Origin: Mytilus trossulus
Lineage: Eukaryota
Reading direction: 5' to 3'
Assembly (NCBI RefSeq): GCF_036588685.1
Contig: NC_086386.1
Location: 47,554,001 to 47,618,000, forward strand
Length of the DNA: 64,000 bases
The notes under the pieces were generated by a model. The model made no database searches. It saw only the letters and a list, made by a program, of their open reading frames with translations, and was not told the origin of the DNA. A program made the translations under genes and the position numbers. Each line of letters starts with the position of its first letter. Within the stretch, counting starts at the first letter, position 1. This document shows positions 8,677-61,592 of the stretch, in pieces.

Positions 8677-9771
8677 CTGAAATGAATAATATAGAATTTA
8701 AAATGTTTGCTGTATCATGTATAATTTACAATCGGTGATGCAGTAACTATTTATTCTCCCAGAATATTTTTTTGTTTTTTTTTGAAGAGTTGTTTTCCTT
8801 TTATAGTTGATGTGTTTCTATCGGTTTTGGTTTTTGATCTGGATTTGTTTTCGCTAAACAAGGACCACCGGTAGAATTAATGAACAATTTTGGGTAGTTT
8901 CTTAACGTTGAGTTTAAAATTACAAAGAAAAAAAAGTTTTTTTTTCTCTAGTGCCTTGATATGCGCATGTTATGTTTTAATTTGATCATTTTCGTTTGTG
9001 GTTGTTTAGTGTGCTACAGCGCACATGAATTATGTTATAACAGACTGATATAGACAGCTTCCTCCTATAAGATGTAAAAAAGTTTATGTTTAGATTTTAA
9101 CAGCTTTTTTCCATAGTTTTTCCTACATAAGTAAATGCCTGTACCACATCAGGCATATAACAGTTGTTTTTCCATTCGTTTGATGTGTTTTAGCTTTTGA
9201 TTTTAGCTTTGATTACGGACTTTCCGTTTTGAATTGTCCTCGGGATTCGGTATTTTTGTTAAAATATGATTTTGCATATGCGATGTATGACTGTTGAACA
9301 GCGGTATACTACTGCTGTCCTTATAAATGAAAATGCGATAACTGATCATATCAACATATGATACATCCTTTCAACAGTATCAAATTGTCAACTAGTGCTG
9401 TTGAGTATAAACATCTGAGTGAATTAATAGTTTTTTCAAGGAATTCATTAGTTGTGGAGCAAGTACGTAATTGAGTAATATTGTTTAAAAAAAAAATCGA
9501 AAAATTGAACCATTATCAATTTCGAAATGAACATATACATGTGATTATAAAATATTCTAACAACAACAATACATTGAATATCACAATTATAATAAAATTA
9601 TAATCCTGGTATTTTTGATAACTATTTACGATCACTGATATCACGATCAAGTTGATGAGAAAATACATTGAAGTTAAATGTTACAATTCTTAAATGTACA
9701 TGCTATTCTTATATCGCAATAGTTCCCTGTAGTACATTAGATCTACAGTTAATTTTTTTTCATTTTTCTTT

Positions 9772-10100
9772 ACATCACTGGGTAAATACCTCTGCTGGTG
9801 GACTATCAGTCCCCGAGGGTATCATCAGTTCAGTTGTCAGTACTTCGGTACTGACATGATGTAACATACTTTTCTAAAATTGTCCGTTTATAAATTATTA
9901 AGAAACTAAGGTTTCAACTCCCTCAGGCAAAGTTGACTTGAGATGAATTTGGCTATCAAATTCAGATATTTTTGTCATAAAGCTCTTCAACGGTTTCGGT
10001 GGATTTCAAATGTTTGGATTTGAGAATTCCTGATGAAGGTAAATCCAGAAAAGTGCTTCGGAGGCATTGAAATTATAAAACGTGGTGTTTTCAATTTTTT
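9772..10100 (+). ncRNA. Second retrozyme family copy, degenerate hammerhead at 10024-10065
   Basis: CTGATGA aggtaaatcca GAAA agtgct TC^ ggaggc. The body shares ccccgagggtatca and acttcggt blocks with the 355-nt family. Confidence 0.7.
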
Positions 10101-11209: not shown

Positions 11210-14200
11210 CTATACTACGAGGAATCGTTTTGATCTCTTTATAAAATTGAATACTTGTTTAAGAATTTGCACATTTTGATCATAGGAAAGAGTTTCTTTT
11301 CCAAAAACCAGTAGTGTTAAGTCCAAATCGCAGCCTTCGGGAAGCCAGCTGAGACCATTAAACAGAATAGCCCTTTCATTTAAATAGAAAGGACAATCGA
11401 AGAAAAAATGGTGCATGTCCTCAATATCCAAACCACATTTACATGTTGGATCAGATATAATGTTAGCTCTAAACAAGTCACAATTCAAGAACGATGCCGA
11501 ACATCTAAATTGGGTTAATATTATGTTCAATTTTCTTGGACCATATAAATAATGTTTTAAAATAGATTGATTCTCATTTCGAATTTCGTAGTTTTTTAAT
11601 TCTACTTTGAATTTTGATAACGAGTCTACATTTCGAACTGATATGTTCAAATTATTCCAAAGTTTAATTGTTGATGGGATAAAGGATTGGGAAGTCAGTG
11701 TCAGCCTGCAAAATGGTAAAATGATATCTTGTCCATTTCGCAAGGGATATTGTGTTGTACATTGAATTTTAGGGGGCACAAGGTTACATAAATATTCAGG
11801 GGCATTATTATTCTGAATTTTATAAAATAATTGTAGTTTTCTTCTCTTTCTTCGTTCCTCTAAAGTTTCCCAACCAACCTCTTTTAAGACAGTCTCAGAG
11901 TGTGTGTAAACAGGCAAACCTGTTACAATTCGTGCAGCTTCAAGTTGTAGCTGTTCTAATTTAATTGAATAACCTTTTCCGCAATTGTCCCATACTTCAG
12001 TTGCATATTCAAAAATTGGTCTAATAAATACTAGATATAATTTTTCCAAATTTTGTCGGCTAAGTTGATATTTGAGTTTTCGCAATATATTCAGATGTTT
12101 TTTAACACTATTTAATATGTTTTCAACATGGTTGTTCCATTTTGCGTCACTTCTAAATGTAACCCCTAGATGCTTATGAGATCGCACAATTGGTATTTTT
12201 TTGTTGTTCATAGTAAAATTAGGGTTTTTTATCTCATTATTTGAGAACATCATAATTTCTGTTTTTTCAGGATTAAAAGACATAAGCCACTTTCTTGACC
12301 ATTCATCCAGCTGTCTTAGGTCACGACTAACAACTGACTGTATAAGTTCCTCGTCATGACCCGAGTAGCTGAACGAAGTGTCATCTGCAAATAGTCTGCA
12401 TAAAGAAGTTAACTGTTCAGCAATATCGTTAATATATATAATAAACAATAAAGGACCAAGAACGGATCCTTGGGGTACACCAGCTGAAACATTGCAAAAA
12501 GTAGAGGATGATTCATTAATGATAACCTTTTGTTTTCTTTGGTATAGGTAGCTAGTGAACCAATTTAAAAGATTTCCCTCAATGCCATATGCTTTCATTT
12601 TATGTAGTAAGCCAATATGCCAAACTTTGTCAAAAGCCTTTGAAAAATCACAAAAAACAAAACAGCAAATTTCTTTTGTTTCTAGTGCATTTAAGATACA
12701 ATCATAGATTTCTATTAATTGATGCACTGTTGAATGTTTTGGCAAAAAACCTGATTGGTATTCATAAATTAGTTTGTTATTAAATAGATGATTATATACA
12801 TGTTTAAACACAACTCGTTCCATAACTTTCCCCACGCAACTAATTAAAGATATTGGTCTGTAATTAGATGGCAAAGAAGAGTCCCCCTTTTTGAAAATAG
12901 CTATTACATTTGCAATTTTCCAGCTGGTTGGATATATACATTGACTTAGGGACTTGTTGAATATAATTTGAAGAGGTATTGCAACTTTATCTGGACAGAT
13001 CTTGAGCATCCTGTGGCTAATCACATCTGGTCCCGAGGCTTTATTTGGATCAAGAATATTAATCATATCTATAATTTCTTGAATAGTGACATGTATGTCA
13101 CAAATTTTATTGTTAGATTTAGTTTCAAATTGTGGTAAGTTGATATTTTCTTCATTTAATTTGGAGATTAAATTAAAATACTTGTTCAAAAGCTCACATT
13201 TTTCTTCATCTTTATATGCTATTTCGTCTATTTTTTCGGTATTTATAATATTTTGGAGTGGGGGGATGTTATTTGATCCATTGTTAGATTTGATTAACAT
13301 TTTCATAATTTTCCAATAAGTTTTTGTATTCGATACATTATTTAGAATGATGTGGTCTAAATTACTTTCAAATTTTTCTTTAGCAACTTTTTTCATATTA
13401 TTGACCCTATTCCTCTGTCGCTTGTACTTCAAAATATCAGATTGTATTTTAGATTTAAAAGCCTTTTTTCGTAATCGATCTCTAGTGCGTAATTCTCTCC
13501 TAAGCTCACTATTGAACCATGGTTTGTCGTTTTTTCGTATAGTTACTTGTTTAGTAGGTATGCACTCCCTTGCAATGTTCAGAAAAGTTACAGTAAATAT
13601 TTCACATAATTCATTAACATCCTTGTCATCGGGAAGAATGGCATGCCAATCTGTTTCATTCATAATTTTCAAAAATTTATCTTTATCCATCTTATCATAT
13701 ATCCACACTTCTCTTTTGAAAGTACGTGACACTGATGACGGACACTCAAGAAATATTACTGCTGCATTGTGATCACTAATATTTGAGGGAATATCTAAAA
13801 CATCTGATAGATAATATGACATACAGTCACTTATTATAATGGGATCTAAGAGTGTACTACTTTTATCAGTAACTCTTGTTGCTTTATCAATTACATTTCT
13901 TAGATTGAACAAGTCCATAGTGTCAATAAGTTTATTATTATTGACATTAAAGAGATCAGAATTTAGATCACCAGTAATCACTATATTTTCGTTTAATTGA
14001 AAGGCAGTTTCTATTGCATGATTTAATCGTGCCCAGAAGTCAGTGTCCGCATTCGGTGGACGATATGAGTGACAAAGAAGGAAGTTTTGACCTTTGGCTC
14101 GTATTTCAACCCAAAGTGTTTCATCAAATGGATTTTCTAGTTCGCTTTTTCGGACGATACCGATATCATCTTTCACATAAATCATTAATCCACCACCAAA

Positions 14201-16086: not shown

Positions 16087-17124
16087 TCAATTCTGTATAA
16101 TCAGCTTTCTGCTGTTTTCGGATTTTTTTGCGAATATTCGACCGTCGGCAGTCCAGTAAGCATTGATTTCATTTTTAGTTTTCATATCGGCCAGGCTTTT
16201 TACTAGTTCTGTTCTATATTGTGATAGGTTTTCAGTTATGAAAATACCATTTGTGTCACCCTTTAGTTCCCTTTTATTGCTGTACACCAAATGTTTCATT
16301 CTATATGATATGAACCTGACTATAACTTGGGACCTGCCTTTTCTTGCCTTGCCTATAACATGAGACCTTCCTATGTCATGCAGGTCTATGTTTATATTTA
16401 GCTTGTTCCTGATTATATCCAATACTATCTCATCTGTATTGACAGGGTGTAAGGTCTTTCCTTGGTTGTCAGTAGGAACTGGAATGTTATGAAAACGAAG
16501 ACTCGTTCTTCTAGAATATTGTTCCTGTGATTCTACTCTAATTTTGAGGTCAGCAATTTCATCACTCAGACAGTCAAGGTCTTTGCCTTGTTCTTTGATT
16601 GTTGTTATATGGTTTGAGGTAGCCTGTTCAAGGTTTGATATTTGTATGAACTGTTTAAGGATGTGTTGCTTGTGAGTTTGTATTACAGTTTCTTGTTCCT
16701 TTATTTGTTTTAGTAGTGGTTGTATCTGTATATCAACGAATCTTTTGGCCTCTTGCTCAATTATTGGTGTAAGGGTATCACTGATCTTTTGTGACAATAA
16801 AGGTATCATAACGTTAAGAACTTCTGGGCTATTAAGAGCATCAAGTACTTTATCGGCAACTGTTTTCCTAAGTGTTGGAGTTTTTCTTTCGCCTACTCCT
16901 CGCAGATCCCCAATTGAGTTACTATGACGTCTGCGGATTTGACGAGTTGACTGTTTTTGTGTGGCTGGTAGGGAGTCTGGGCTATCAGGATTACCACGTT
17001 TATTGCTGCCAGTTATTATGGAAGAGATTGATGGACTTGGCTGTGAGCTAGTCAATATAATGTCGGACTGAGATTGAGACTCAATGTTTACATCAAAGGA
17101 GGCATCCATTTTGTGTTCACTCAT
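16087..17124 (-). CDS. LINE ORF1 (coiled coil plus RRM/CTD-like nucleic-acid chaperone)
   Basis: Heptad-rich segment followed by EQYSRRTSLRFHNIP, IGRSHVIG, VIVRF, IFITENL and WTADGRIFAK motifs typical of L1/L2/CR1-type ORF1. The frame stays open 39 codons past the TGA, to 15967. Confidence 0.88.
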   Translation of the reverse strand: MSEHKMDASFDVNIESQSQSDIILTSSQPSPSISSIITGSNKRGNPDSPDSLPATQKQSTRQIRRRHSNSIGDLRGVGERKTPTLRKTVADKVLDALNSPEVLNVMIPLLSQKISDTLTPIIEQEAKRFVDIQIQPLLKQIKEQETVIQTHKQHILKQFIQISNLEQATSNHITTIKEQGKDLDCLSDEIADLKIRVESQEQYSRRTSLRFHNIPVPTDNQGKTLHPVNTDEIVLDIIRNKLNINIDLHDIGRSHVIGKARKGRSQVIVRFISYRMKHLVYSNKRELKGDTNGIFITENLSQYRTELVKSLADMKTKNEINAYWTADGRIFAKKSENSRKLIIQN

Positions 17125-17847: not shown

Positions 17848-18140
17848 TCACCAGACACGTCTTTCGTCTACAAAAGACTCATCAGTGACGCTCAAATAAA
17901 AAAATAAAAAAAAAGCCAAATAAAGTACGAAGTTGAAGAGAATTGAGGACCACAAATTCCTGAACGTTTTGTCAAATACAGCTTAAGAATTATATTCCTG
18001 AGGTAGGAAAGCCGTAAACAGGTAATTTATAATTGAGACCATATCAATGATAATTTATGTCAGCACATACTGGGCTGGTAATACTCTCGGGGGAATAAAA
18101 AATCAACTAGCAGTGGCATCGACGCAGTGGTTTAATATAC
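17848..18140 (-). ncRNA. Degenerate retrozyme with hammerhead (about 17848-17891), sense to the TRPC intron
   Basis: Reverse complement: gcgtca CTGATGA gtcttttgtagac GAAA gacgtg TC tggtg, with helix III disrupted. Confidence 0.75.
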
Positions 18141-19402
18141 TTAGAGTTACACTTTACCGCGGTTTTGTTTTTTAATTTTATCTATTAACATCGTCGTAAG
18201 TGTTTGGTCTCGGGTTGATATTTTCCTGACTGAAATAATACCATGTTTGCTGCATTAATGGATTTGGGGACGTAGATTCATTTCCTAAAAAGGGTAAAAA
18301 AAATCCCACACCCAAGGGTGGGCCTCACCTGTCCCCTAAATGTGTACTATTTCAGTGAAATGAAAAGTTTGGATACTTCTATCAGTGAAACCATGGTTAC
18401 ACAATGGAAACCTCAATAAATTAATTGCATCAAATATCAGAAGATAAAGTTGTTAGAACAAATTACCTTCCTGCAGAAATTTGTATGATATTTGATTTGA
18501 TTCACAACGTAAATCTATGAGGAGTTAAGGGTTATGTTCTCATGACATTGCAAAAAGAAAAAATAACAAAAATATCGAGCTCCGGAAGTCCCTATGCATA
18601 TGGCAAAATCAAAAGCCCAAACACATCAAATGAATTGATAACATCTGCCATATTCCTGACTTGATGCAGGCATTTCCGTATGTAGAAAATGGTGAATTAA
18701 ACATGGTTTATAGCTAGCTAAATCTCTCACTGGTATGGCCCAATTTAAATAAAAGAAATCACCGTAACGTATGCGATCAAAACAAAAATAGGCCGTTTAT
18801 AACGTGGTATGAATATTTGGTCGGTTTTATCTTGCACTGGAAAATGCGGATAAACAAAAGTGCGAAGAAACTCTGAAAGGTTAAATATCTCATATCAAAT
18901 CATTAGCAGAATAAAAGTTATGTTAATCGAAGAATGAAACGCTTGAAGAAAGAATATGTGTTTGCATATACTATGATATATATAATGTAAAATTCTGTGC
19001 AGCAATGTGTTTCATCAAGGAAGTATAATCAACGCTGATCAATAGAGCACTCAATGATTAATAGCCAGATATAATATCGACTCAATGCATTATGATGCTC
19101 GTGATTGATATCTAGTGTTAATTGTGTGGTAATACCAAAGTTCTGTGACAAATGGTTTAATATAAGGATACGAATCCACAATTCTTTTAAATAATATTTA
19201 ATGAGGGCCATGGTTAAATCTCCAATGCATTAACGTTACGCTCTTTAATATTTGGACCGTACTCCCAATATAATACCTATAACACGGTGGGTAAGGTTGT
19301 TCTGCGAGAGAACGTTCTGTGCTGGTGATCCGGTCCTGACGGGTGCTGGTGATCATTGAAAAATGTAAACACAAGTAAATTTGTACTGTAAAGCGTTTTA
19401 AA

Positions 19403-19833
19403 GCGTCACTGATGAGTATTATGTAGACGAAACGCGCGTCTGTCGTACTAAATTATAATCCTGGTACTTTTGATAACTATTTACACCACTAGGTCGATGC
19501 CACTGCTAGTGGACGTTTCGTCCCCGAGGGTATCACCAGCCCACTATTTAGCACTTCGGTGTTGACATGAATAGCAATTATGTGGTAATTTTTATAAATT
19601 AACTGTTTACTTAACTTTGAATTTTTCGAAAAACTAGGGATTTTCTCATCCCAGGAATAGATTACCTTAGCCGTATGTGGCACAACTTTTTGGAATTTTT
19701 GATCCCCAATGCTCTTCAATTTCGTACTTGTTTGGCTTTATAAATATTTTGATATGAGCGTCACTGATGGGTCTTATGTAGACGAAACGCGCGTCTGGCG
19801 TACTAAATTATAATCCTGGTACCTTTGATAACT
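19403..19833 (+). ncRNA. Retrozyme: 355-nt unit flanked by two type I hammerhead ribozyme motifs
   Basis: gcgtca-CTGATGA-gtattatgtagac-GAAA-cgcgcg-TC^tgtcgt (cut after 19440) and gcgtca-CTGATGG-gtcttatgtagac-GAAA-cgcgcg-TC^tggcgt (cut after 19795). About 75-nt terminal direct repeats. Confidence 0.88.
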
Positions 19834-22229
19834 AATTAAAGCACAATTTCATTAAATAAAAAATAAAAGCTTATTATCTAAACGATTATACACATTTAGT
19901 CACGCTGAATGAAACAATTGACACCGGTAAAAAACAAAAATGTGATAATATGTGTCTGAAGAGTATTTTTATTATGACGTTGCTTACATCCTAAACATTT
20001 TTTTTGCAATTGTTCAAAATTCAGCGTGACCAAATGTGTCTGGATCAACCTTTATTGGGAATGATCAAATCAAATATTTGAAAGTCAACGATGTAACAGA
20101 ACCGAAGTATGTAAACAGCATAATGAACAAATGAAATTAAGTATTAAATACTAGTTCTCTTTGTAGAATCATCTAACCATGATTTTTTAAAGTCATTTGA
20201 AACCAGTGAGTGGTTAAAAATAATTTTAATCCAATTCTTGAACTAATGCATGTATATATCATAAACTTAGAACTCTGTTCACGATTTTGTCATTTTTTAC
20301 GCAAATATATCGTATAACCCACATTTTTTTTTCTCTGTCTGTTATGATTTAACAAATATGGCTGCTCATTAAATGCCGTGTTTTAAAGCCGAAGTTTATC
20401 GATTGTCACCTTATAGTAAACACATAACAAAAAGCATGTGTATTGAGCACGTGTTTAACATGTACAATCAGATACGAGTAGGGTTACGCTCAGGTCAGTA
20501 TGCATACGGATACTATGTCGGCGAATTGCTTCCTGGAAGCAAGCAATTAAAAATAAGTAAATATCTTCTAAATGTGCACAAATAAAAGAATTTTCCTCAG
20601 AAAAAAGTTTATGTACATAAGTTGTATAATAAAAACTATCCATTTAGTTATAAAAAACATATGTATGATTTTTTTTTAATTTGAGGTTTCCTACGACTTT
20701 AAAAAAAGTATTAACAAATTCTGACCTTCAAAGTAAATAAAAAAGGGTTGGTCTAAGAAAACTAACAAAATCAAACGTTAGACTTTATCAACCAACGTAA
20801 ACAGTGAAAACAACTGTCATATTCATGACGTGGCGTGTCCCGGAAAATAAAGAATGGTGGTTTAAACTTGGTTTTAATGCTGGCTAAACATTCAACTTGT
20901 ATGATCGTTGTTTAAAGTTTTGTTTTATGTACAAAATTGTATAAGCAACCTAACCAGACAAAATTGTTTATGTAACAAGGGTTGGGATCCTACAGTAAAA
21001 TAAGTAACATACGTCAAAGACATAAAACACAACAACAAAAATTAAACAAATATACAAACAAATCTTACGAAGGCGTATTAAGTAATATTTACATACGTTT
21101 AAAAGATTGGTACAACTATTACGTTATCAAAATTAATTTTTTTTTTTAAATGATTTGATCCATGGCTACACGGAAAACCCAACAGAATGGTATATTAAAA
21201 AGTTTATCTTTACATAAAATCGAGGAAAATAACATGTCGTAATTTAACCCTTTCTGTTGTTAAAAACCACAACTTGTGAAAAAAAAACTAAACAATGCAC
21301 AAGTGAATGATAAACTATCTACCATTTTAGTTATGACATACATGATGTAAAGACCGGAAGGTTACATGGATAATTTTATAATCTTGTTTGCGATGTTGTA
21401 GTTTCTGTTTTCATTTTTCGAAAAATCAGTGAGAATCTCAAACTTATTTCTCTGTCAATCAGAGAACTGAAAAAATCTTCGTCTTAATCTCTGAGAGGAA
21501 TTTTTGGGATGTGGTTTCCATGGGGTAACAAATAAGGAGTAAAGTATATGGATCCTGGAAAAGTTAAAATAAAACATGAACATGAACTCCCCCGTCTCAC
21601 CCCCTCATCCCTAAAGAATCAATCATTATATCGTTTAATGCAACACGTGATCTTATAATTATCATATGTATCATATTATGACAATGATTACATAAAAGAT
21701 CTTTATAAGTATGACAAATTCATATTGGTGTGAGAGAAAAAAACAACATTTTCACAATAAAGCCAGTTTGAACTGTTATAGAATCTTGTAGTTTGTAGGT
21801 TAAATGTGATGTAAACTTTTTGGATGATTTTTGTTTGCATAAAGACTTTCTGTTATAATTAGTAAAATCTTTTTAGTTAAATCTCCACAACAAGACAAGG
21901 GAATCTCTCCTATGCATAATTTGAAACCAGTGCTACCGTACTAGATTTAACAGTGACCCTCTATTCGGTTCAATACAAAATCACAAACCACATAATTGTC
22001 ATAGAAAAAAATGTAATTTGTTTCTTACCTAAATGCACTGAGAAAATTCATTTACGAAATGATATTTATTGACCAGTTATACTGTTATTACACTCCTAAT
22101 AGATCGATCTAAGCAAAGAATTTAAGAAATGTGTGTTATTTTTTATTAATTAGTTCACTGTATCCATATGATCTTGTCAATTTTATTTTTTGTAGGTTAC
22201 ATTTGCAAACGTTAAATGAAATGATACAA

Positions 22230-22454
22230 ATAGTTATCAAAGGTACCAGGATTATAATTTAGTACGCCAGACGCGCGTTTCGACTACATAAGACTCATCA
22301 GTGACGCTCATATCAAATATTTATAAAGCCAAACAAGTACGAATTTGAAGTTAATTGAGGATCCAAAATTCCAAAAAGTTGTGCCAAATACGGCTAAGGT
22401 AATCTATTCCTGGGATAAGAAAATCCTTAGTTTTTCGAAAAATTCAAAGTTTTG
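22230..22454 (-). ncRNA. Truncated retrozyme with hammerhead (about 22264-22307), sense to the TRPC intron
   Basis: Reverse complement: gcgtca CTGATGA gtcttatgtagtc GAAA cgcgcg TC^ tggcgt, with one helix II mismatch. Confidence 0.82.
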
Positions 22455-26712: not shown

Positions 26713-27852
26713 GGTATGTTTCTCTGCATAGATGACATATTGCAGATCCTTTCACAAAACAAATTGCACGAGGTATTTTGTTAACTTCAAATACTTTACC
26801 AATCATAAACATTAAACCAATAACTGCCCTTTTACAAATAAAACGTAGAAATATAGAGACGAATATAATATGAGGCTGGTATGCCACATGTCACAGTGAT
26901 TGATTGAGCGACAGGCCAACAATCTATACCCGTCAAAAAAAGATAAAAAAATCGTAAAATATAAAGACTAAGAATATTGGAAAAGGAATAAAAAAAATTC
27001 AACCATTAAAATATGCGGTACGACCAGTTTGGCATCAACATAAATAGCTTCTCTGCATATATACAACATACAGCAGATCCGACCATAAGTAGATATGTAT
27101 TGTATGAAATGAAATCACAATATCAATCATTTTCATTAAACCAAAGAGATAGCTCTTTCACAGAACAAAACGTTTAAATAAAGAGACCAATATAATATTT
27201 AGACAGGTGTGTCATTTCGATTTATTGAGACACAGGCCAAAAATATATCCTCGAAAGAACTAAACATAAACGTTCTAGGAATGTGAACTGGAACCGTTCG
27301 CTCCCTATGCGACACACAGCGCTATTGTGAGTTATAAGTTGTTAATATCATATGTGAAAGAGGGCGAAATCTGCACAAGCAGCTTTTGAAATAGCATTAC
27401 TTATTTTTTCTAATGAAATTAATAAAATTACTTTACAGGCTTATGCTTAGGTCATCATTTTTTTTAACATTGTGCAATGATATTACAAAAAACACATTAA
27501 AAAACAGAACTAGTTATACACCAAAGTTATAAGCTTCAGAATCCAAAATACACACATCTCGAAAGACAGAATTATATAGAATTGCAGAAACCAAATTTCT
27601 CTAAAGAAACGGACAAAAGTTGTCTAGGATATGGTACGAATCTGATCCGTATTACCTTTTTGATGTGCTCCCGTTTGGTTTAGACATATAAAATAGAATT
27701 GAGTTGTCTCCCCTAAGCGTACTTTTTAAAAGTGTTGGAGAAATGTATGGTTGTTCAACAATCAACTTGCAATTAAAGCAAAAAAGGCACTGAAAATGTA
27801 TCATGAAAAGGTAGGATGGGTTATTACATATACAAATATTTGTCTATATTAC

Positions 27853-28821
27853 CTGCTTTTGCTCATATTTTAAGGCAAGTTTCAGTCTTGATAAAGTCAG
27901 TTTATCTTCATTTGGATTCCGTTCAAGTGCTGCACCGAAGCCGGAAAAATCCTCATCCGACGGATCACATTCTTTGTTTAAGACAGCTATTACTTCCTCA
28001 CTACTCCGACATTGGTCCAGCAAATCACATGAATATCGTCGACATTGGTCACGGAGTTCCATATAAGTATCCTTGAATTCGTTCTCACGGAGGGCTAGTT
28101 TTTCTAACGTATGTGATAATTTGAATGCGGTCAAAATAGGATCGGCACTCGTCAATGAAATCCAGGCTGGACTCGCCAAGGCTCGGAAAGTGTTAATACG
28201 AAATAAAGAATGACGTAGACTGTCTTTGTGAACCTGTTCTTGACAGGTTTTGCATGAACATGATAACTGATGTGGGGGATTAATATCTGCCCCTCTTAGC
28301 AAAAGTAGCTGTAGAATTTCAAACTGATTACAGTGCGCTGCCAACATTACTGGAGAAATATCAGATGAGTAATCGGAACTCTCTTCACCTTGTCCGTTAT
28401 TTTTCATTTTGGACCACTCGGAACCTAGCATGTTAGATTTGATTGACGGATGGTCAATTAGCATCTCCACAATCTTGTAAACGCCTTCTCTAATGGCGTA
28501 TAACAAGGCATCTCCAATTTCAACCCCATCCTGTTGAAGCAATATTTCTACGATTTCAACATTTTCGTTGTCAACAGCAATTTGAATTGCCGATCTTCCA
28601 AGCATATTTGTACAGTTAACGTTAACGGGATTTGGTTCATGTAAACAACGTACAACAGTGTGTTTATCTCCCCTTTCGACTGCCTCCAGGAAAATTCGTT
28701 CATTTGTATTTGACCTATGGGATACCTTTAAAGGCTCTAGTGGCATTTTGATTGGACGAATACGAAGTGAACGCTGTGAATACTGGGATGACATCCTCTC
28801 TGATATTGTTTTGATGCTCAT
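27853..28821 (-). CDS. TRPC: TRPC-family (TRPC4/5- or TRP-gamma-like) cation channel, coding exon 1: ankyrin repeats and Zn-binding motif
   Basis: ATG at 28821, preceded by acceptor tttttacag| (exon starts 28842). Ankyrin repeats (FLEAVERGD, LGRSAIQIAVDNENVEIVEILL, GDALLYAI, SPVMLAAHCNQFEILQLLL), HxxxCxCxxC motif, ALASPAWISLTSADPILTAF, LSRLKLALKYEQKQ. Donor CAG|GTAAT, phase 0. Confidence 0.95.
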
Positions 28822-41963: not shown

Positions 41964-42174
41964 GGTCTAATGACTTGGTCAACATTATAAGACATTACAA
42001 TACTAATATGATATAATTATCTTTATAGCACTATAAGCCTCAGTCACAATCGGAGCCAAGACAAAATAGAAAAAAACAACTAACACAATGATATCAAAAA
42101 CAGTCAGTATCAACATAACTTTTCAAAGTTCTTAAATGTGCTAGAAATATGGTGAATGAGTTCCTCCCTCTAAA

Positions 42175-42333
42175 ACTTTTAGGAATGTTGGTCCTCAATG
42201 CTCTTCAACTTCGTACTTTATTTGGCCTTTTTAACTTTTTTGGATTCGAGCGTCACTGATGAGTCTTTTGTAGACGAAACACGCGTCTGGCGTATACATA
42301 AAAATCAGTCCTGGTATCTATGATGAGTTTATT
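42175..42333 (+). ncRNA. Truncated retrozyme with core-intact hammerhead (42250-42293)
   Basis: gcgtca CTGATGA gtcttttgtagac GAAA cacgcg TC^ tggcgt; tail gtcctggtatctatgatgagttt. Confidence 0.82.
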
Positions 42334-48531: not shown

Positions 48532-51500
48532 ACTAAGCTTAATGATAATTGTCATATTGATACACCTGATAGGGAAAGATAACGCATTGAATTACCACAT
48601 GATAAAAGTAAATAAATAATTTATATTTTTATTTGAGGGAAGTTATGACATCTGTAGATTAAAGGTAGGAATACAGGATAAATGCGAGTTGAATGTTAGG
48701 CCAGTGCTAAATCTATCATTGTATTCATTCCCTTGTCCTGTTCCAATCATTTATTCACCCGTTCACTCATTTGATTCTGATGATAATGAATTAATGTATT
48801 ATATGTGGTTTGTAGTAACAAACAAGACCAATTGGATTATTTTCATAATGTTCTACTATGATTCTTTCCGTTTAGAATACTATTCACTTAAAAAAAAAGT
48901 TTAAAAACTTAAAAAATCATGTTCACATTGATGTTCTTTTTTTTCTTTTTGTCAAGATATTTTTAAATTGTTTCCAAACTTCTTTTTTTAAATAATTTTA
49001 ATTTTAGAAATATATATGATCTTCTGTCGACTGTAAAACTGAACTATATTCCATGTAATGCACTTTTCGTGTAGTTCAGTCCTTTTCAATAGCTGTTAAC
49101 CACACGGGAGCTGTATAATATCTAAATATAGCTTTATCTGAACATAGCTTGAAAACAAATAAACTGAGATAAAGGGTATTCGCTAATTAATGACATCACG
49201 ATCTAAAGTTGCAAGGCAATTTCATTTGAATTAACGAAGAAAAACATTTTTTCTCGACATTTGTATTTGTTTTGAAAATGCATGGTTTATTTACTATTAG
49301 ACTTCAATCAATTAACAAAATTCTACTCGAAGTAATGTAGTAGGTGGTTTTCTATGCTTAGGAATAACACCAATGAGAGCTTAAAGGTTCTGATGATTTA
49401 TTTACCAGTATATAAAACAAGTCACTTGTGGAGTGAGTTGTGCTGATACGGTTAACGGCACATCATATAAACAACAATCATGTGCTCTACATAATTACAT
49501 TACATGGAGTCAGTATTCTATAATAATGTTGTCCAAAATATATAAGGTTTACAGGTAAACTATGTGGTCAAGATAAACAGACATAAATTCAATGGACTGT
49601 CATGGCTATCGTCCGTGGAAATGTACAGGTCCAAAACAAAGGAAATTAAACTTGACCGCGAAATATAAACAGCCAATCAGATACAATGATTTAAGTAAAT
49701 CCCTAATGAATATTCATAAAATAACGTGAATATTACTATACATAAAAATAAGGTTTGCAAGTAATAATTTAAACTGAATATAAAATATTCAAAATATGTA
49801 ATAAAGCTTTTATAATAAATATAGTATTTAAATAGATGATTTTTACAATATATAAAATGATCATAAAAATCACTCTACTACAGTAATACTTTTAAAAGAT
49901 ATCTCAATATGAATATTGATCCGGCACTTAAATGTTAAAACTGTGTAAATCGTAAAGAACAAATACAGTAACCATTTTTAAACATCTATCTTATCAAAAG
50001 ATTCACGTATGTGGAAAACTTCTCGCCGATTCAATTTACTTTTTCTATGGTCTAACAGAATCTACAACCCATTACCACTGTTACGTTTGGTCCTTGGTGC
50101 TGTTCATCTTTGTACTTGTTTTGGCTTTCAAACTTTTGTTTCTGGGCGTCACTAGTAGGTCTTGTGTGGACAAAATGCACTTCTGGCGTATTAAAATTCT
50201 AACTTGTTGCCTTTTGTTGGCTGTTGTTCGTGTGATTCTTTGTCAATTGTGTTCTCCAATTTATTTATATTGTAGTCCTGTGGTGTTGTGTTGTCATATT
50301 GATGTTGTATTTCACATGGCCATAAAAGTGCGAGGTTTGGCATGCCACAAAACAAGGTTCAACCCACCATTTTTTCCTTTAAAAATGACCTGTACCAAGT
50401 CAGGAATATGGCCATTGTTAAATTATAGTTCGTTTCTGTGTGTGTGTTACATTTTAACGTAGCGTCGTTTGTTTTCTCTTATTTTTGAGTGTAAATTCAC
50501 ATTGCGATAAAACGTGTCACGGTACTTGTCTATCCCAAATTCATGTATTTGGTTTTCATGTTATATTTGTTATTCTCGTGGGATTCTGTCTGATGCTCGG
50601 TCCGTTTCTGTGTGTGTTACATTTTAGTGTTATGTCGTTATTCTCCTCTTATATTTAATGCGTTTCCCTCGGTTTTAGTTTGTTACCCCGTTTTTGTTTT
50701 TTGTCCATGGATTTATGAGTTTATGAACAGCGGTATAGTACTGTGGTCTTTATTTACTGCAATGATTATAATTTATTTTAAAATATGGAAATGCTATATT
50801 CCGATAAAAAATCTACTTTCCGAAAATTTCTGTTCTGAGATGAAAACTACATAGATTTTTATTTAAATAGATTTTATTTCAATAGTATGCTAATAAAATT
50901 CAAATGAAATAATTTACGGATTCTGCAATGACTTCCTTCAGCCATATAGTATAAACATTAAGGATGATGTATGCATCTGGCTTTTATTATATATACTGTA
51001 CGAAAGGTTACACAGTGGTAATTCCTTCTCCATACCCGGATCATGATAAGGCTGTTTAGAATTTTAACCGGCTTTTTTTTTTTACACCGATCCAGAACGT
51101 ACATTCACGGTTAATGGAAGTACTTTCATTTTAATATTCAGAAATAAATGAGAAAATATTGAATCAACGATGACCATCTTCTTTTTACTGCTATCTAGTT
51201 AGTAAACGTAAGACCATTCGGGCTTTGTGACCTTTCGTCTTGCAGTGAATCCAAAATGTTTACAAATTAATTTTCACTTTTGTGTAAAGTCATTTAAAAC
51301 ATTTTAAAACACCTGACTTATTTTTTGCTGGAAAAATATGTTCAGTAGATGCTGCATTTGTTTTGTCCAATATTAGTGTTTAGTTATATTGACCTTAGTA
51401 TGGTATACAGAAGAGAAATCTAGTTCTCGAAAGTAAATACGATCGTTACACCTAAATGCGTAATACTTATATAAAACAATATTTATCATATTAACAAGGT

Positions 51501-51787: not shown

Positions 51788-52146
51788 TAACTATTTACAC
51801 CACTGGGTCCATGCCACTGATGGTGGCCGTTTCGTCCCCAAAGGTATAACCAGTCCAGTAGTCAACACCGAACGGTGTTCACATGCATATCAATAATGTG
51901 GTCATATTTATTAATTTCTTGTTACAAAAGTTTGAAGTTTTCTAAAAACTAAGGATTCACTTATCCCATGCATAGATTAGCCGTAATTGTCACAACGTTT
52001 TGGAATTTTTGATCATCAATGCTCTTAAACTTTGTACTTGTTTGGCTTTATAAATATTTGGATGTGAGCGTCACTGATGAGTCTTTTGTAGACGAAACGC
52101 GCGTCTGGCGTACTAAATTATAATCCTGGTAACTTTGATAACTATT
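51788..52146 (+). ncRNA. Retrozyme monomer with intact type I hammerhead (52068-52111)
   Basis: gcgtca CTGATGA gtcttttgtagac GAAA cgcgcg TC^ tggcgt. The body is homologous to 19474-19833. Confidence 0.88.
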
Positions 52147-53595
52147 AACTTTTCCATTGCAATTCTTGATATCATACTATTATATTTTACCTTCGCACAA
52201 CCGCTGTTTCATATTTGTATTTAATAATAACTTTGACGGTTTGCTTGAATATGTTATAGGGATGTTGACTTTAGTAAACGTAACCTTGGATTAACATGGT
52301 TAACGCACACCTTTCTCGTAGATAATAACAAATACAACGTACCTTTCAACTTTTCAAAAATATAGTCAGTAACAGCATCCTATCTGTAAACGTAATGTTT
52401 CTTGTAAAGATTAATATAAACGATATTAATCACCATATATTTAATTACAATTGTCTTACATAGAACTAAACCACTAGACATTGATATATTTAAACTTAGG
52501 ATAAATTTTGTATCTTTTAATATCAAAATCAACTAGCATGATAGATTCGCAAAGTCAACAAAACTGTTCTTTCATTCAATGATCTGACGGTTTTAAATAC
52601 GGTAAGATGAAATTTCACGAAACCTGTTATTAGTGTTTGCTTCTGATTTCCCTTCTTTTCGTGGACGGCAGTATCCAACCAGCAACTTAACTATTTTCCT
52701 GCAGTAGTACCACTAAAGTGTTTTTTTTATTACCTCGTTCAAGCTGATAGCCATCTCGTTACTAGCTGCACAGTGCACTGATTGTGTGTTTTAGTTTTAC
52801 GAAATATCATGTATGTATATGGCTTAGATTCACCACAGGTTGTACCTGTACCGAGTCAGATTATCTGGACCAGGTGTTGGTCCTTGTTTTTGTTGTGTTT
52901 GTTTGTCTCATTTGTTCCCGGAGTAGTTGTGTGGTGGTTGTTACTGTAGTGTGTTGTACTATGTGGTACCTATTTGCGATGCATGTGATCCCCTTTTATG
53001 CATTATAAAATATGAAAAAGGACACTTTATAAAACACTACACAATTAGATTGATACTGATCGATACGAACGCCATCATTAACCAGGGATGAACTCGGATG
53101 AACACATTACATAGAAATATATACCAGTGCTTAATTATTTGGTGTTTTGAAATTTGCAAATTTGATATGATTAACAGCCTCCTTAGTACTTTATTATTCC
53201 TTAATTGTCACATCCAATATTAGTGATTTGCGAAATAATACTCTACATAACAATTTATGTGATTATAAAGAAAAAGTTCAGCGACATTTTAAAGACGTCT
53301 TCAATGTCAGCTTGATTAAGATATACGAGTACCCTTGCTTCTTACTTCAAGTTTAATTATTTAGTCATCAAAAGTGTACCTAGGTGGAAAGGTGTTTTTT
53401 TCCTTAGCCTTAACAAATGACATAAAAGATTAAATTATATTATTTTCTTTCTTTGTCTTCGTCAAATGTAAACCCCAGCTTTGGAAAATCTTTAGATACT
53501 GTATTTACTAGTTCAATCACAGTATTCATCTATATTGACAAACGTTAGAGTTCTTAGTTCCTAGGAATGAAATACAACCGTTCCATCTTTTCAAT

Positions 53596-61175: not shown

Positions 61176-61472
61176 GTAAGTATCATTGTTAATGTCACCC
61201 AGCCTGTAAATTAGTCAGAAATTTAAACCTTAAGAGGTTCGACACAACGATAGATGATCAAACAATTCTATTGAGTATTGTAGCTGTGTCAAATATTTGC
61301 GACGTTTCTATCGATTTCTGTCGGCATATTGTACTTTTGTAAATCAATGATTGAGGTAAAAATGTTGATTGGAGCATAGTTGAACAAATTTAACTCAAAG
61401 AAATGTAAATATGCCTGTCTTTAGACAGGTATTTCTTCAATGTTTTATTTTCAGTTATATTTTGTGTCCTTT

Positions 61473-61592
61473 ACGTACTTTATTTGGCCTTTTTAACTTT
61501 TTTGGATTCGAGCGTCACTGATGAGTCTTTTGATGAAACGTGCGTCTGGCGTTTATACTAAATTTAGTCCTGGTATCTATGATGAGTTTATT
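61473..61592 (+). ncRNA. Truncated retrozyme with hammerhead (61512-61552), sense to the OCA2 intron
   Basis: gcgtca CTGATGA gtc-tttt-gat GAAA cgtgcg TC^ tggcgt. Confidence 0.78.

What the first reader, a model, noticed from the sequence alone, without database searches (positions are those of the whole stretch)
19403..19833. Retrozyme unit bracketed by two hammerhead ribozymes: predicted 355-nt self-processing (circular) RNA
Seen: two type I hammerhead motifs (helix I gcgtca/tg(g/t)cgt, CUGAUGA, helix II, GAAA, GUC cleavage triplet) with predicted cut sites exactly 355 nt apart (after 19440 and 19795) and no ORF of recognisable function between them. Known: tandem type I hammerheads define metazoan non-LTR retrozymes, whose transcripts self-cleave to monomers that circularise; units of roughly this size have been reported in Mytilus. 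Inference: this is a monomer-plus-overlap insertion, as expected from reverse transcription around a circular template. This copy is damaged: the first ribozyme has helix I and II mismatches and the second has A9->G.
Basis: partly seen in the sequence, partly recalled or inferred. Interest (0 to 1): 0.85.

Follow-up and report, generated by a model that had tools for sequence, protein, structure and literature searches.

The report
Decayed copy of known mussel retrozyme
This is one worn-out genomic copy of the hammerhead-ribozyme "retrozyme" repeat already described in Mytilus mussels. The family is abundant and strongly transcribed, but both ribozymes of this copy are mutated and almost no RNA comes from it, so the finding is real but ordinary.

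Summary
Two type I hammerhead motifs lie on the + strand at 19403-19446 and 19758-19801, with GUC cut sites after 19440 and 19795, exactly 355 nt apart. They sit inside an 88-nt direct repeat.

The element is a member of the published Mytilus non-LTR retrozyme family (Cervera & de la Peña 2020, PMC7229834). It has the same ribozyme sequence as their cloned Mg353 repeat and matches their primer.

- **Family size:** this 1.3-Gb genome holds 15,149 exact copies of the intact 32-nt ribozyme core.
- **Insertion shape:** across 45 insertions the 3' end is fixed about 40-45 nt past the cut site, while the 5' end varies. That is a 5'-truncation footprint of reverse transcription across an intact cleavage junction.
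- **Expression:** RNA-seq reads cover exactly the element (up to about 1,600x) and nothing beside it, mostly in ribozyme sense.
- **This copy:** the reads carry the canonical bases at this copy's three damaging mutations, and about 0.6-4% of reads match its private variants. The locus is essentially a dead copy.
- **Structure and coding:** no ORF, and no unusual fold stability.
- **Rejected lead:** a 29-nt match in a Naiad-type Penelope-like element proved to be a nested retrozyme fragment, not a shared terminus.

This scan has already found the same kind many times elsewhere in this genome. Novelty: already known.

The parts
19402..19440 (+). 5' partial unit (family positions about 317-355), which is the 5' and core part of ribozyme 1. 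The insertion's 5' truncation point is at 19402-19405.
   Evidence: blastn of the unit against the window: 317-355 maps to 19402-19440 at 94.9%; direct repeat D1.
19403..19446 (+). Hammerhead ribozyme 1 (type I). The core CUGAUGA is intact. Helix II has an A.G mismatch (19418) and helix I a U.U mismatch (19443). GUC cut site after 19440.
   Evidence: RF00163, 27.1 bits, E 1.9e-4, two non-canonical pairs flagged. The family and the RNA reads carry C at 19418 and G at 19443.
19441..19795 (+). One complete 355-nt retrozyme unit, from cut site to cut site. It is non-coding, 38% GC, and carries 18 private substitutions relative to the family majority.
   Evidence: 91.5% identical to 29 independent copies, which are 94% identical to each other.
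19524..19552 (+). Conserved internal block that matches the reverse complement of the published primer 110R_Mytil_Rtz.
   Evidence: 3 mismatches, 0 matches expected by chance; primer taken from Supplementary Table 1 of PMC7229834.
19758..19801 (+). Hammerhead ribozyme 2 (type I). The helices are canonical, but the core has A9 to G (19770, CUGAUGG). GUC cut site after 19795.
   Evidence: RF00163, 27.5 bits, E 1.5e-4. 2,240 of 2,296 RNA reads have A at 19770.
19796..19838 (+). 3' overlap (family positions 1-43), ending at the family's fixed 3' terminus ...TTTGATAACTA(A/T)TTA.
   Evidence: 30 of 45 insertions end at positions 40-45.
19398..19404 (.). Possible target-site duplication, upstream copy (TTAAAGC, of which AAGC is the minimal version). 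Its partner is at 19836-19842. This is weak evidence.
   Evidence: Read from the sequence. The anchored duplication test across 37 insertions is only marginal: 3.84 against 3.55 +/- 0.15, p about 0.03.
19836..19842 (.). Possible target-site duplication, downstream copy (TTAAAGC). Its first three bases overlap the element's 3' end.

Best explanation
The stretch 19402-19838 is one old, mutated insertion of the Mytilus non-LTR retrozyme. This is a non-coding, non-autonomous retroelement with a unit of about 355 nt that carries one type I hammerhead ribozyme. The insertion is 1.23 units long: 39 nt, one full unit, then 43 nt.

How the family works:
- Genomic copies, especially arrays, are transcribed in ribozyme sense. 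Shown here for the family.
- The hammerheads cut multimeric transcripts after GUC to give unit-length RNAs, which a host tRNA ligase closes into circles. Published for a near-identical ribozyme and family; not testable here.
- A retrotransposon reverse transcriptase, most likely from a Penelope-like element, starts cDNA synthesis at a fixed internal site about 40-45 nt 3' of the cut site. It runs back across the intact junction for a variable distance, giving 5'-truncated insertions of 0.1 to several units. The footprint is shown here; the enzyme and the circularity of the template are inferred.

This particular copy has lost function. Ribozyme 1 has two helix mismatches, ribozyme 2 has A9 to G in the catalytic core, and the locus contributes almost none of the family's RNA.
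For: Motifs and spacing.

Family identity: the published clone Mg353 reads GAGCGTCACTGATGAGTCTTTTGTAGACGAAACGCGCGTC|TGGCGTA. This string occurs exactly at window 52066-52112 and with 1-3 changes at the two motifs here. Published primer 110R matches 19524-19552. PMC7229834 reports about 5,000 type I hammerheads in 350-390 bp repeats, self-cleavage in vitro, circular RNA on northern blots and RtcB circularisation.

Abundance: 15,149 exact matches to the intact 32-nt core against 0 for the reversed control. The unit search gave 5,523 first-look candidates, with arrays of up to about 61 units.

Insertion footprint: 3' ends fall at unit positions 40-45 in 30 of 45 insertions. 5' ends are scattered from 10 to 318, with a further cluster 5-18 nt upstream of the cut site.

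Expression: in raw RNA-seq run X24, depth is 67-1,640x within 19390-19839 and 0 in the flanks. First mates lie about 5:1 on the - strand, which means + sense RNA in the usual stranded library. There is no pile-up of read ends at the cut sites.

Decay of this copy: 18 private substitutions. The reads carry the canonical base at 19418 (318 of 347), 19443 (514 of 545) and 19770 (2,240 of 2,296). Only 133 of 5,420 reads are at least 99% alike.
Against: - Both Rfam scores are below the curated gathering threshold (27 against 34 bits).
- The family is too young for covariation: variation in 61 distinct ribozyme sequences is nearly all singletons.
- Thermodynamic folding does not recover the three-way junction as the minimum-energy fold of the isolated motifs.
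- The circular unit is no more stable than shuffled sequence: z = -0.1 for this copy and -1.2 to +0.4 for four others.
- Target-site duplications are weak and irregular.
- Circularity, self-cleavage and the identity of the reverse transcriptase were not tested here.
- Very long arrays may have grown by unequal crossing-over rather than by reverse transcription.
Confidence: 0.9

Rival explanations
1. It is plain satellite DNA. The 355-bp repeat spreads and breaks only at the DNA level, by unequal crossing-over, replication slippage or segmental duplication. The hammerhead would be a passenger, and dispersed copies would be array fragments.
For: There are large head-to-tail arrays of up to about 61 units. 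Higher-order duplicated blocks exist: L019/L020, and the 1,056-bp repeat in L047. Target-site duplications are weak.
Against: Random breakage of arrays would give both ends at random unit positions. Instead, 30 of 45 independent insertions on many chromosomes end within a 6-nt window (positions 40-45), while the 5' ends vary. A second subfamily ends at the equivalent point. Very short 3'-terminal fragments of 29-50 nt are dispersed, one of them nested in a Naiad element.
Confidence: 0.05
2. The template for insertion is an uncleaved linear multimeric transcript, not a circular RNA. The monomer-plus-overlap shape would then reflect reverse transcription of read-through array RNA.
For: The footprint only requires an intact 355|1 junction, which an uncleaved multimer also has. 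The published mussel ribozyme is slow, with kobs about 0.1 per minute. Some RNA reads run on into heterogeneous flanks: the loose ends at 19834 and 19838 agree only 0.42.
Against: Published northern blots show that most of the family's RNA in mussel tissue is circular, with linear forms below 5-25%. No multimer-specific evidence was found here. A linear transcript would be expected to have its own defined 3' end, for example a poly(A) tail, and none is seen at the insertion 3' ends.
Confidence: 0.25
3. The element is a fragment (pseudo-LTR) of an autonomous Penelope-like element rather than an independent non-autonomous family.
For: Penelope-like elements carry type I hammerheads in their pseudo-LTRs and form partial tandems (PMC8557442). 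In Xenopus, retrozymes group with pseudo-LTRs (bioRxiv 10.64898/2026.07.22.740005).
Against: No reverse transcriptase or GIY-YIG ORF adjoins this copy or the 45 sampled insertions. The nearest ORF in the window is an unrelated LINE at 11210-14185. Among 30 GIY-YIG loci, only nested or neighbouring retrozyme pieces were found. The one shared 29-nt block is an insertion into the Naiad 3' UTR.
Confidence: 0.03

Closest known systems
Mytilus galloprovincialis non-LTR retrozyme (clone Mg353; circRNA clones MN642551-MN642576; Cervera & de la Peña, NAR 2020, PMC7229834)
   Same: Same type I hammerhead sequence, the same unit size class (350-390 bp), low GC, tandem or dimeric arrangement, a shared internal block (primer 110R site), and abundant sense RNA.
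   Different: The window unit belongs to the subfamily whose post-cleavage sequence is TGGCGTACTAAATTATAATCC, with loop 2 UUAUGU. The cloned Mg353 is of the sister subfamily (TGGCGTATTTACTAAATTTGGTCC, loop 2 UUUUGU). Units of that sister type in this genome (L039) match the window unit at only about 77-79%. This copy also carries inactivating mutations.
Amphibian satellite 2 / axolotl retrozymes (type I hammerhead repeats of 330-350 bp)
   Same: [quoted passage not shown]
   Different: No sequence homology outside the ribozyme core. The amphibian ribozymes need dimeric action for efficient cleavage, whereas the mussel one cleaves, slowly, as a single motif.
Penelope-like elements (including Naiad) and their pseudo-LTRs
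   Same: Partial head-to-tail tandems, variable 5' truncation, a fixed 3' end, and irregular target duplications. They co-occur with retrozymes in one genome and are the proposed mobilisers.
   Different: The retrozyme has no ORF. The abundant young Naiad family sampled here has no canonical hammerhead. Its only strong match to the retrozyme is a nested 29-nt fragment.
Plant LTR retrozymes and hammerhead viroids (Avsunviroidae)
   Same: Hammerhead-processed, ligase-closed small circular RNAs.
   Different: The plant elements have type III hammerheads, LTRs, PBS and PPT, high GC and 4-bp duplications. Viroids are infectious, replicate RNA to RNA, carry ribozymes in both polarities and fold into very stable rods or branches. 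Here there is one polarity only and no excess fold stability.

Membership tests
Hammerhead ribozyme, type I (Rfam RF00163) | Conserved core CUGANGA ... GAAA ... cleavage triplet NUH, with three helices and helix I open-ended | tested here: met
   The full-length model (1-45) aligns to both motifs. The core is intact in motif 1 and has A9 to G in motif 2.
Hammerhead ribozyme, type I (Rfam RF00163) | Score at or above Rfam's gathering threshold (34 bits) | tested here: not met
   27.1 and 27.5 bits. The shortfall reflects the 2-bp helix III, the loop lengths and this copy's mutations. It lowers the formal Rfam call but not the family identity, which rests on identity to an experimentally cleaving ribozyme.
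Hammerhead ribozyme, type I (Rfam RF00163) | Self-cleavage after the H of NUH | not testable with these tools
   Published for clone Mg353, whose ribozyme is identical to the family's canonical form. The two mutated motifs here have not been tested.
Metazoan non-LTR retrozyme (Mytilus family) | Type I hammerheads in head-to-tail repeats of about 350-390 bp, from dimers to large multimers | tested here: met
   Spacing is 355 nt here. Arrays of 1 to about 61 units occur genome-wide.
Metazoan non-LTR retrozyme (Mytilus family) | Sequence homology to the published mussel retrozyme | tested here: met
   The ribozyme string is identical or nearly identical to Mg353. The primer 110R site is at 19524-19552. 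A full pairwise alignment to the clone was not run, because the clone exists only as typed text.
Metazoan non-LTR retrozyme (Mytilus family) | Low GC (under 45-50%), no LTR/PBS/PPT, and no coding capacity | tested here: met
   GC is 38%. The longest stop-free run is 40 aa on + and 82 aa on -. The only direct repeat is the unit overlap.
Metazoan non-LTR retrozyme (Mytilus family) | Abundant transcription of the repeat | tested here: met
   Met for the family: 5,420 reads from about 6% of RNA run X24, confined to the element. Not met for this locus: about 0.6-4% of reads carry its private letters.
Metazoan non-LTR retrozyme (Mytilus family) | Unit-length circular RNA | not testable with these tools
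   Short reads mapped on a monomer-plus-overlap reference cannot separate circles from multimers. The absence of read-end pile-ups at the cut sites is compatible with circles. Circles are published for the family.
Metazoan non-LTR retrozyme (Mytilus family) | Dispersal by retrotransposition (insertion footprint) | tested here: met
   Fixed 3' end at positions 40-45, variable 5' truncation, and dispersed copies on many chromosomes. Target duplications are only marginal.

The most novel reading that the evidence does not exclude
The family-wide footprint may record how a retrotransposon enzyme primes on a small RNA circle. The footprint has three parts: cDNA synthesis always starts 40-45 nt downstream of the ribozyme cut site; every insertion longer than that crosses an intact junction; and 5' ends cluster inside the GC-rich helix III. 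Together these would indicate site-specific internal initiation of reverse transcription on the ligated circle, by a Penelope-like (possibly Naiad) enzyme that was active at the same time. The retrozyme fragment fossilised in the Naiad 3' UTR supports the overlap in time. I did not find this described for the mussel family in the two papers read.
Probability: 0.3. Interest if true: 0.45.

Novelty: already known. Interest (0 to 1): 0.15.

Why it matters
It matters little as a discovery. The family, its ribozyme, its circular RNA and its likely link to Penelope-like elements are published, and this locus is an inactive copy.

Its use is for annotation. These elements are not picked up at Rfam's gathering threshold, so about 15,000 ribozyme motifs in this genome would go unlabelled by a standard scan.

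The fixed 3' end with variable 5' end gives a concrete footprint. Anyone studying how reverse transcriptases copy small circular RNAs could use it to design a retrotransposition assay.

Tried and rejected
1. **Shared 3' terminus with an autonomous element.** I searched 30 GIY-YIG loci of the genome for retrozyme similarity. A young Naiad-type family carries a 29-nt block equal to retrozyme positions 13-41, at blastn E values of about 2e-7 to 3e-6 for the 28/29 and 27/29 versions. Its GIY-YIG domain is N-terminal, at aa 179-271 of a 965-aa ORF. The block does not mark a shared terminus:
   - It lies 415 nt upstream of the Naiad 3' end, as defined by the L080 3' junction and the L054 5' junction.
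   - It is present only in the third of three 3' UTR repeats of about 270 nt, as an insertion relative to the other two.
   - It is therefore a nested, severely 5'-truncated retrozyme fragment.
   - Similarity of the Naiad repeat to the retrozyme outside the block is not significant (p about 0.08).
2. **Covariation support for the ribozyme helices.** The family is too young; changes are almost all singletons.
3. **Viroid-like hyperstable fold.** Rejected: z-scores are -1.2 to +0.4.
4. **Regular target-site duplications.** Only marginal enrichment, and an unanchored test was null.
5. **Mapping the Naiad 3' end genome-wide.** The search returned only full-span hits and was uninformative.
6. **Reverse transcriptase evidence for the Naiad ORF.** The solved-structure search failed on a frame error and was not repeated. 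Pfam finds only GIY-YIG in that ORF, so 'Naiad-type' rests on domain order and size alone.
7. One script call returned no answer and was rerun in reduced form.

Full report
**What is there.** On the + strand, 19403-19446 and 19758-19801 each read GCGUCA / CUGAUG(A/G) / helix II hairpin / GAAA / CGCGCG / UC / UG(U/G)CGU. Rfam's type I hammerhead model (RF00163) aligns end to end to both, at 27.1 and 27.5 bits (E about 2e-4 in a 601-nt search). Both scores are below the curated 34-bit gathering score, which is why a whole-window gathering scan returned nothing. The two motifs lie in a direct repeat, 19402-19489 / 19757-19844, 92% identical, spaced 355 nt. The GUC cut sites are after 19440 and 19795. 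A 32-nt pattern of the ribozyme finds six sites in the window against none in 100 shuffles.

- Ribozyme 1 has a C-to-A change in helix II (19418) and a G-to-U change in helix I (19443).
- Ribozyme 2 has A9 to G (19770).
- Helix III is only two base pairs, capped by the palindromic tetraloop GCGC, as the source paper describes for invertebrate retrozyme hammerheads.

**What it is.** Cervera & de la Peña (NAR 2020, PMC7229834) reported about 5,000 type I hammerheads in 350-390-bp repeats of Mytilus galloprovincialis. They showed self-cleavage of a cloned repeat (kobs about 0.1 per minute). They also showed abundant circular RNAs in gonad, mantle and other tissues, and circularisation by RtcB. 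Three lines tie the window element to that family:
- Their clone Mg353 (Supplementary Table 2) carries the ribozyme string GAGCGTCACTGATGAGTCTTTTGTAGACGAAACGCGCGTC|TGGCGTA. That string occurs exactly at window 52066-52112, and with one to three changes at the two motifs studied here.
- Their primer 110R matches 19524-19552.
- The genome is 1.30 Gb with 32% GC and chromosome-sized contigs numbered up to at least C15, which fits a mussel assembly. The species is not given to me.

The window unit belongs to the subfamily with loop 2 UUAUGU and post-cleavage sequence TGGCGTACTAAATTATAATCC. The published clone belongs to a sister subfamily, which is also present and expressed here (and the loose ends at 19756 and 19802).

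**Family size and shape.**
- The intact 32-nt core occurs 15,149 times in the genome, against 0 for the reversed control.
- The 355-nt unit gives 5,523 first-look candidates. They range from fragments to arrays of about 61 units, such as C1:269295-290909.
- I sampled 48 loci containing 45 separable insertions, including the other family fragments in the window. The 3' end falls at unit positions 40-45 in 30 of the 45, at ...TTTGATAACTA(T/A)TT(AC).
- The 5' end is anywhere from position 10 to 318, with an extra cluster 5-18 nt upstream of the cut site, inside helix III. The sister subfamily ends at the equivalent place.

This is the footprint of reverse transcription from a fixed start with variable 5' truncation. 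Every insertion longer than about 43 nt crosses the 355|1 junction, so the template had that junction intact. It was either a ligated circle or an uncleaved multimer. The published predominance of circles makes the circle more likely, but that step is inferred.

Target-site duplications are at best short and irregular. An anchored test gave 3.84 against 3.55 +/- 0.15 nt, p about 0.03, with two clear 8-nt cases. For this copy a 4-7-nt candidate exists: TTAAAGC at 19398-19404 and 19836-19842.

**This copy.** It is 39 nt, plus 355 nt, plus about 43 nt (19402-19838), or 1.23 units. It differs from 29 independent copies by 8.5%, while they differ from each other by 6%. It carries 18 private substitutions at sites where the family majority is at least 80%. 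Three of these are the ribozyme mutations.

**RNA.** In raw RNA-seq run X24, about 6% of the run was read at 88% or more likeness.
- 5,420 reads map, with depth of 67-1,640x strictly between 19390 and 19839 and zero in both flanks.
- First mates lie about 5:1 on the - strand, which in the usual stranded library means RNA of ribozyme (+) sense.
- No pile-up of read ends was reported at the cut sites.
- Only 133 reads are at least 99% alike.
- At the three damaging sites the reads carry the canonical base: 318 of 347 at 19418, 514 of 545 at 19443 and 2,240 of 2,296 at 19770.
- At other private sites 0.6-4% of reads carry the window's letter.

The family is therefore strongly expressed from other, intact copies, and this locus contributes next to nothing. 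Short reads on this reference cannot prove circularity.

**Structure and coding.** No frame is open over repeated laps; the longest runs are 40 aa on + and 82 aa on -. The circular minimum free energy of this unit is -69.9 kcal/mol, with z = -0.1 against dinucleotide shuffles. Four other units give z from -1.2 to +0.4. There is no viroid-like excess stability. The isolated 48-nt motifs do not fold into the three-way junction as their minimum-energy structure, as expected for a 2-bp helix III. The 61 distinct ribozyme variants sampled show only singleton changes, so covariation is uninformative.

**Who copies it.** The literature proposes Penelope-like elements (PMC7229834 discussion; PMC8557442). 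A 2026 preprint shows homology between retrozymes and pseudo-LTRs in Xenopus (10.64898/2026.07.22.740005). I tested this for the present family.
- Among 30 GIY-YIG loci, a young and abundant family carries a 29-nt block matching retrozyme positions 13-41. The match ends exactly at the retrozyme's 3' terminus. Copies of this family are 98-99% identical, and its GIY-YIG domain is N-terminal in a 965-aa ORF, that is Naiad-like.
- The block lies 415 nt upstream of the Naiad's own 3' end.
- It is an insertion present only in the third of three 3' UTR repeats.
- It is therefore a nested, 5'-truncated retrozyme fragment that the Naiad family later carried along.

This shows that the two were active in overlapping periods. 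It does not identify the mobiliser, which remains inferred.

**Rivals.** Pure satellite dynamics cannot explain a 3' end fixed within 6 nt across chromosomes. They may, however, account for the growth of long arrays. An uncleaved multimeric template cannot be excluded. A Penelope-like pseudo-LTR fragment is unlikely, since no ORF adjoins any sampled copy.

**Verdict.** The element is a decayed member of a published family, and notes from this scan show the same kind reported many times in this genome. Interest is low. The only modestly useful addition is the explicit insertion footprint for this mussel subfamily.

Noticed in passing
window 51788-52149 (+): Another copy of the same family. It starts at unit position 34 and ends at the canonical 3' terminus (position 44). 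It carries a fully canonical hammerhead (52074-52105) identical to the published Mg353 ribozyme. Already noted by the scan as s1-827584.
   Followed up: partly
window 22228-22453 (-), 42174-42287 (+), 9595-9637 (+), 9769-9859 (+), 50098-50178, 61471-61546: Further 5'-truncated or fragmentary retrozyme insertions. 22228-22453 starts at position 171 and has a helix II change (GUAGUC). 42174-42287 is of the sister subfamily. 9595-9637 is only the 3'-terminal 35-43 nt. About eight family fragments lie in the 64 kb.
   Followed up: partly
window 17854-18143 (-): A divergent relative, 69% identical to the unit over positions 34-355. Its hammerhead-like motif has a disrupted helix III (GAAAGACGUGUC). 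It is probably an older or different retrozyme lineage.
   Followed up: no
window 11210-14185 (-) and 16087-17124 (-): A 991-aa ORF with a reverse transcriptase domain (RVT_1, E 2e-38) and a weak endonuclease/exonuclease/phosphatase match, that is a LINE. A 345-aa ORF without a clear family lies upstream on the same strand.
   Followed up: partly
window 27844-28821 (-): An open frame with ankyrin repeats and a TRP_2 domain (E 2.5e-26), which is an exon of a TRP-type cation channel gene. The retrozyme may lie in or beside this gene.
   Followed up: no
window 19270-19360: The stretch just upstream of the retrozyme belongs to another high-copy repeat. It has very high summed contig depth in the DNA-like run X16 and low RNA depth (3-13x), with consistent variants at 19294, 19301, 19330 and 19356.
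   Followed up: no
L047 (G000:C1:160327-164268): Near a contig end, three retrozyme copies each start directly after TTAGGG-like telomeric repeats. They are repeated with a period of about 1,056 bp, as a higher-order unit of telomere-like repeats plus retrozyme.
   Followed up: no
L079:5471-8365 with 3' UTR 8990-9800 (G000:C9:8149000-8158999): A young, abundant Naiad-type Penelope-like element with a period of about 4.6 kb. Its 965-aa ORF has an N-terminal GIY-YIG domain, copies are 98-99% identical, and there were 3,000 first-look candidates. Its 3' UTR holds three tandem repeats of about 270 nt, and a retrozyme 3' fragment is nested in the third. An inverted retrozyme copy lies about 470 nt upstream of the element (L079:4035-4495).
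   Followed up: partly
family-wide: The 5' ends of insertions are not uniform. There are clusters 5-18 nt upstream of the cut site (inside the GC-rich helix III), and around unit positions 73-80, 243-261 and 287-303. These are possibly pause sites of the reverse transcriptase on structured RNA.
   Followed up: no
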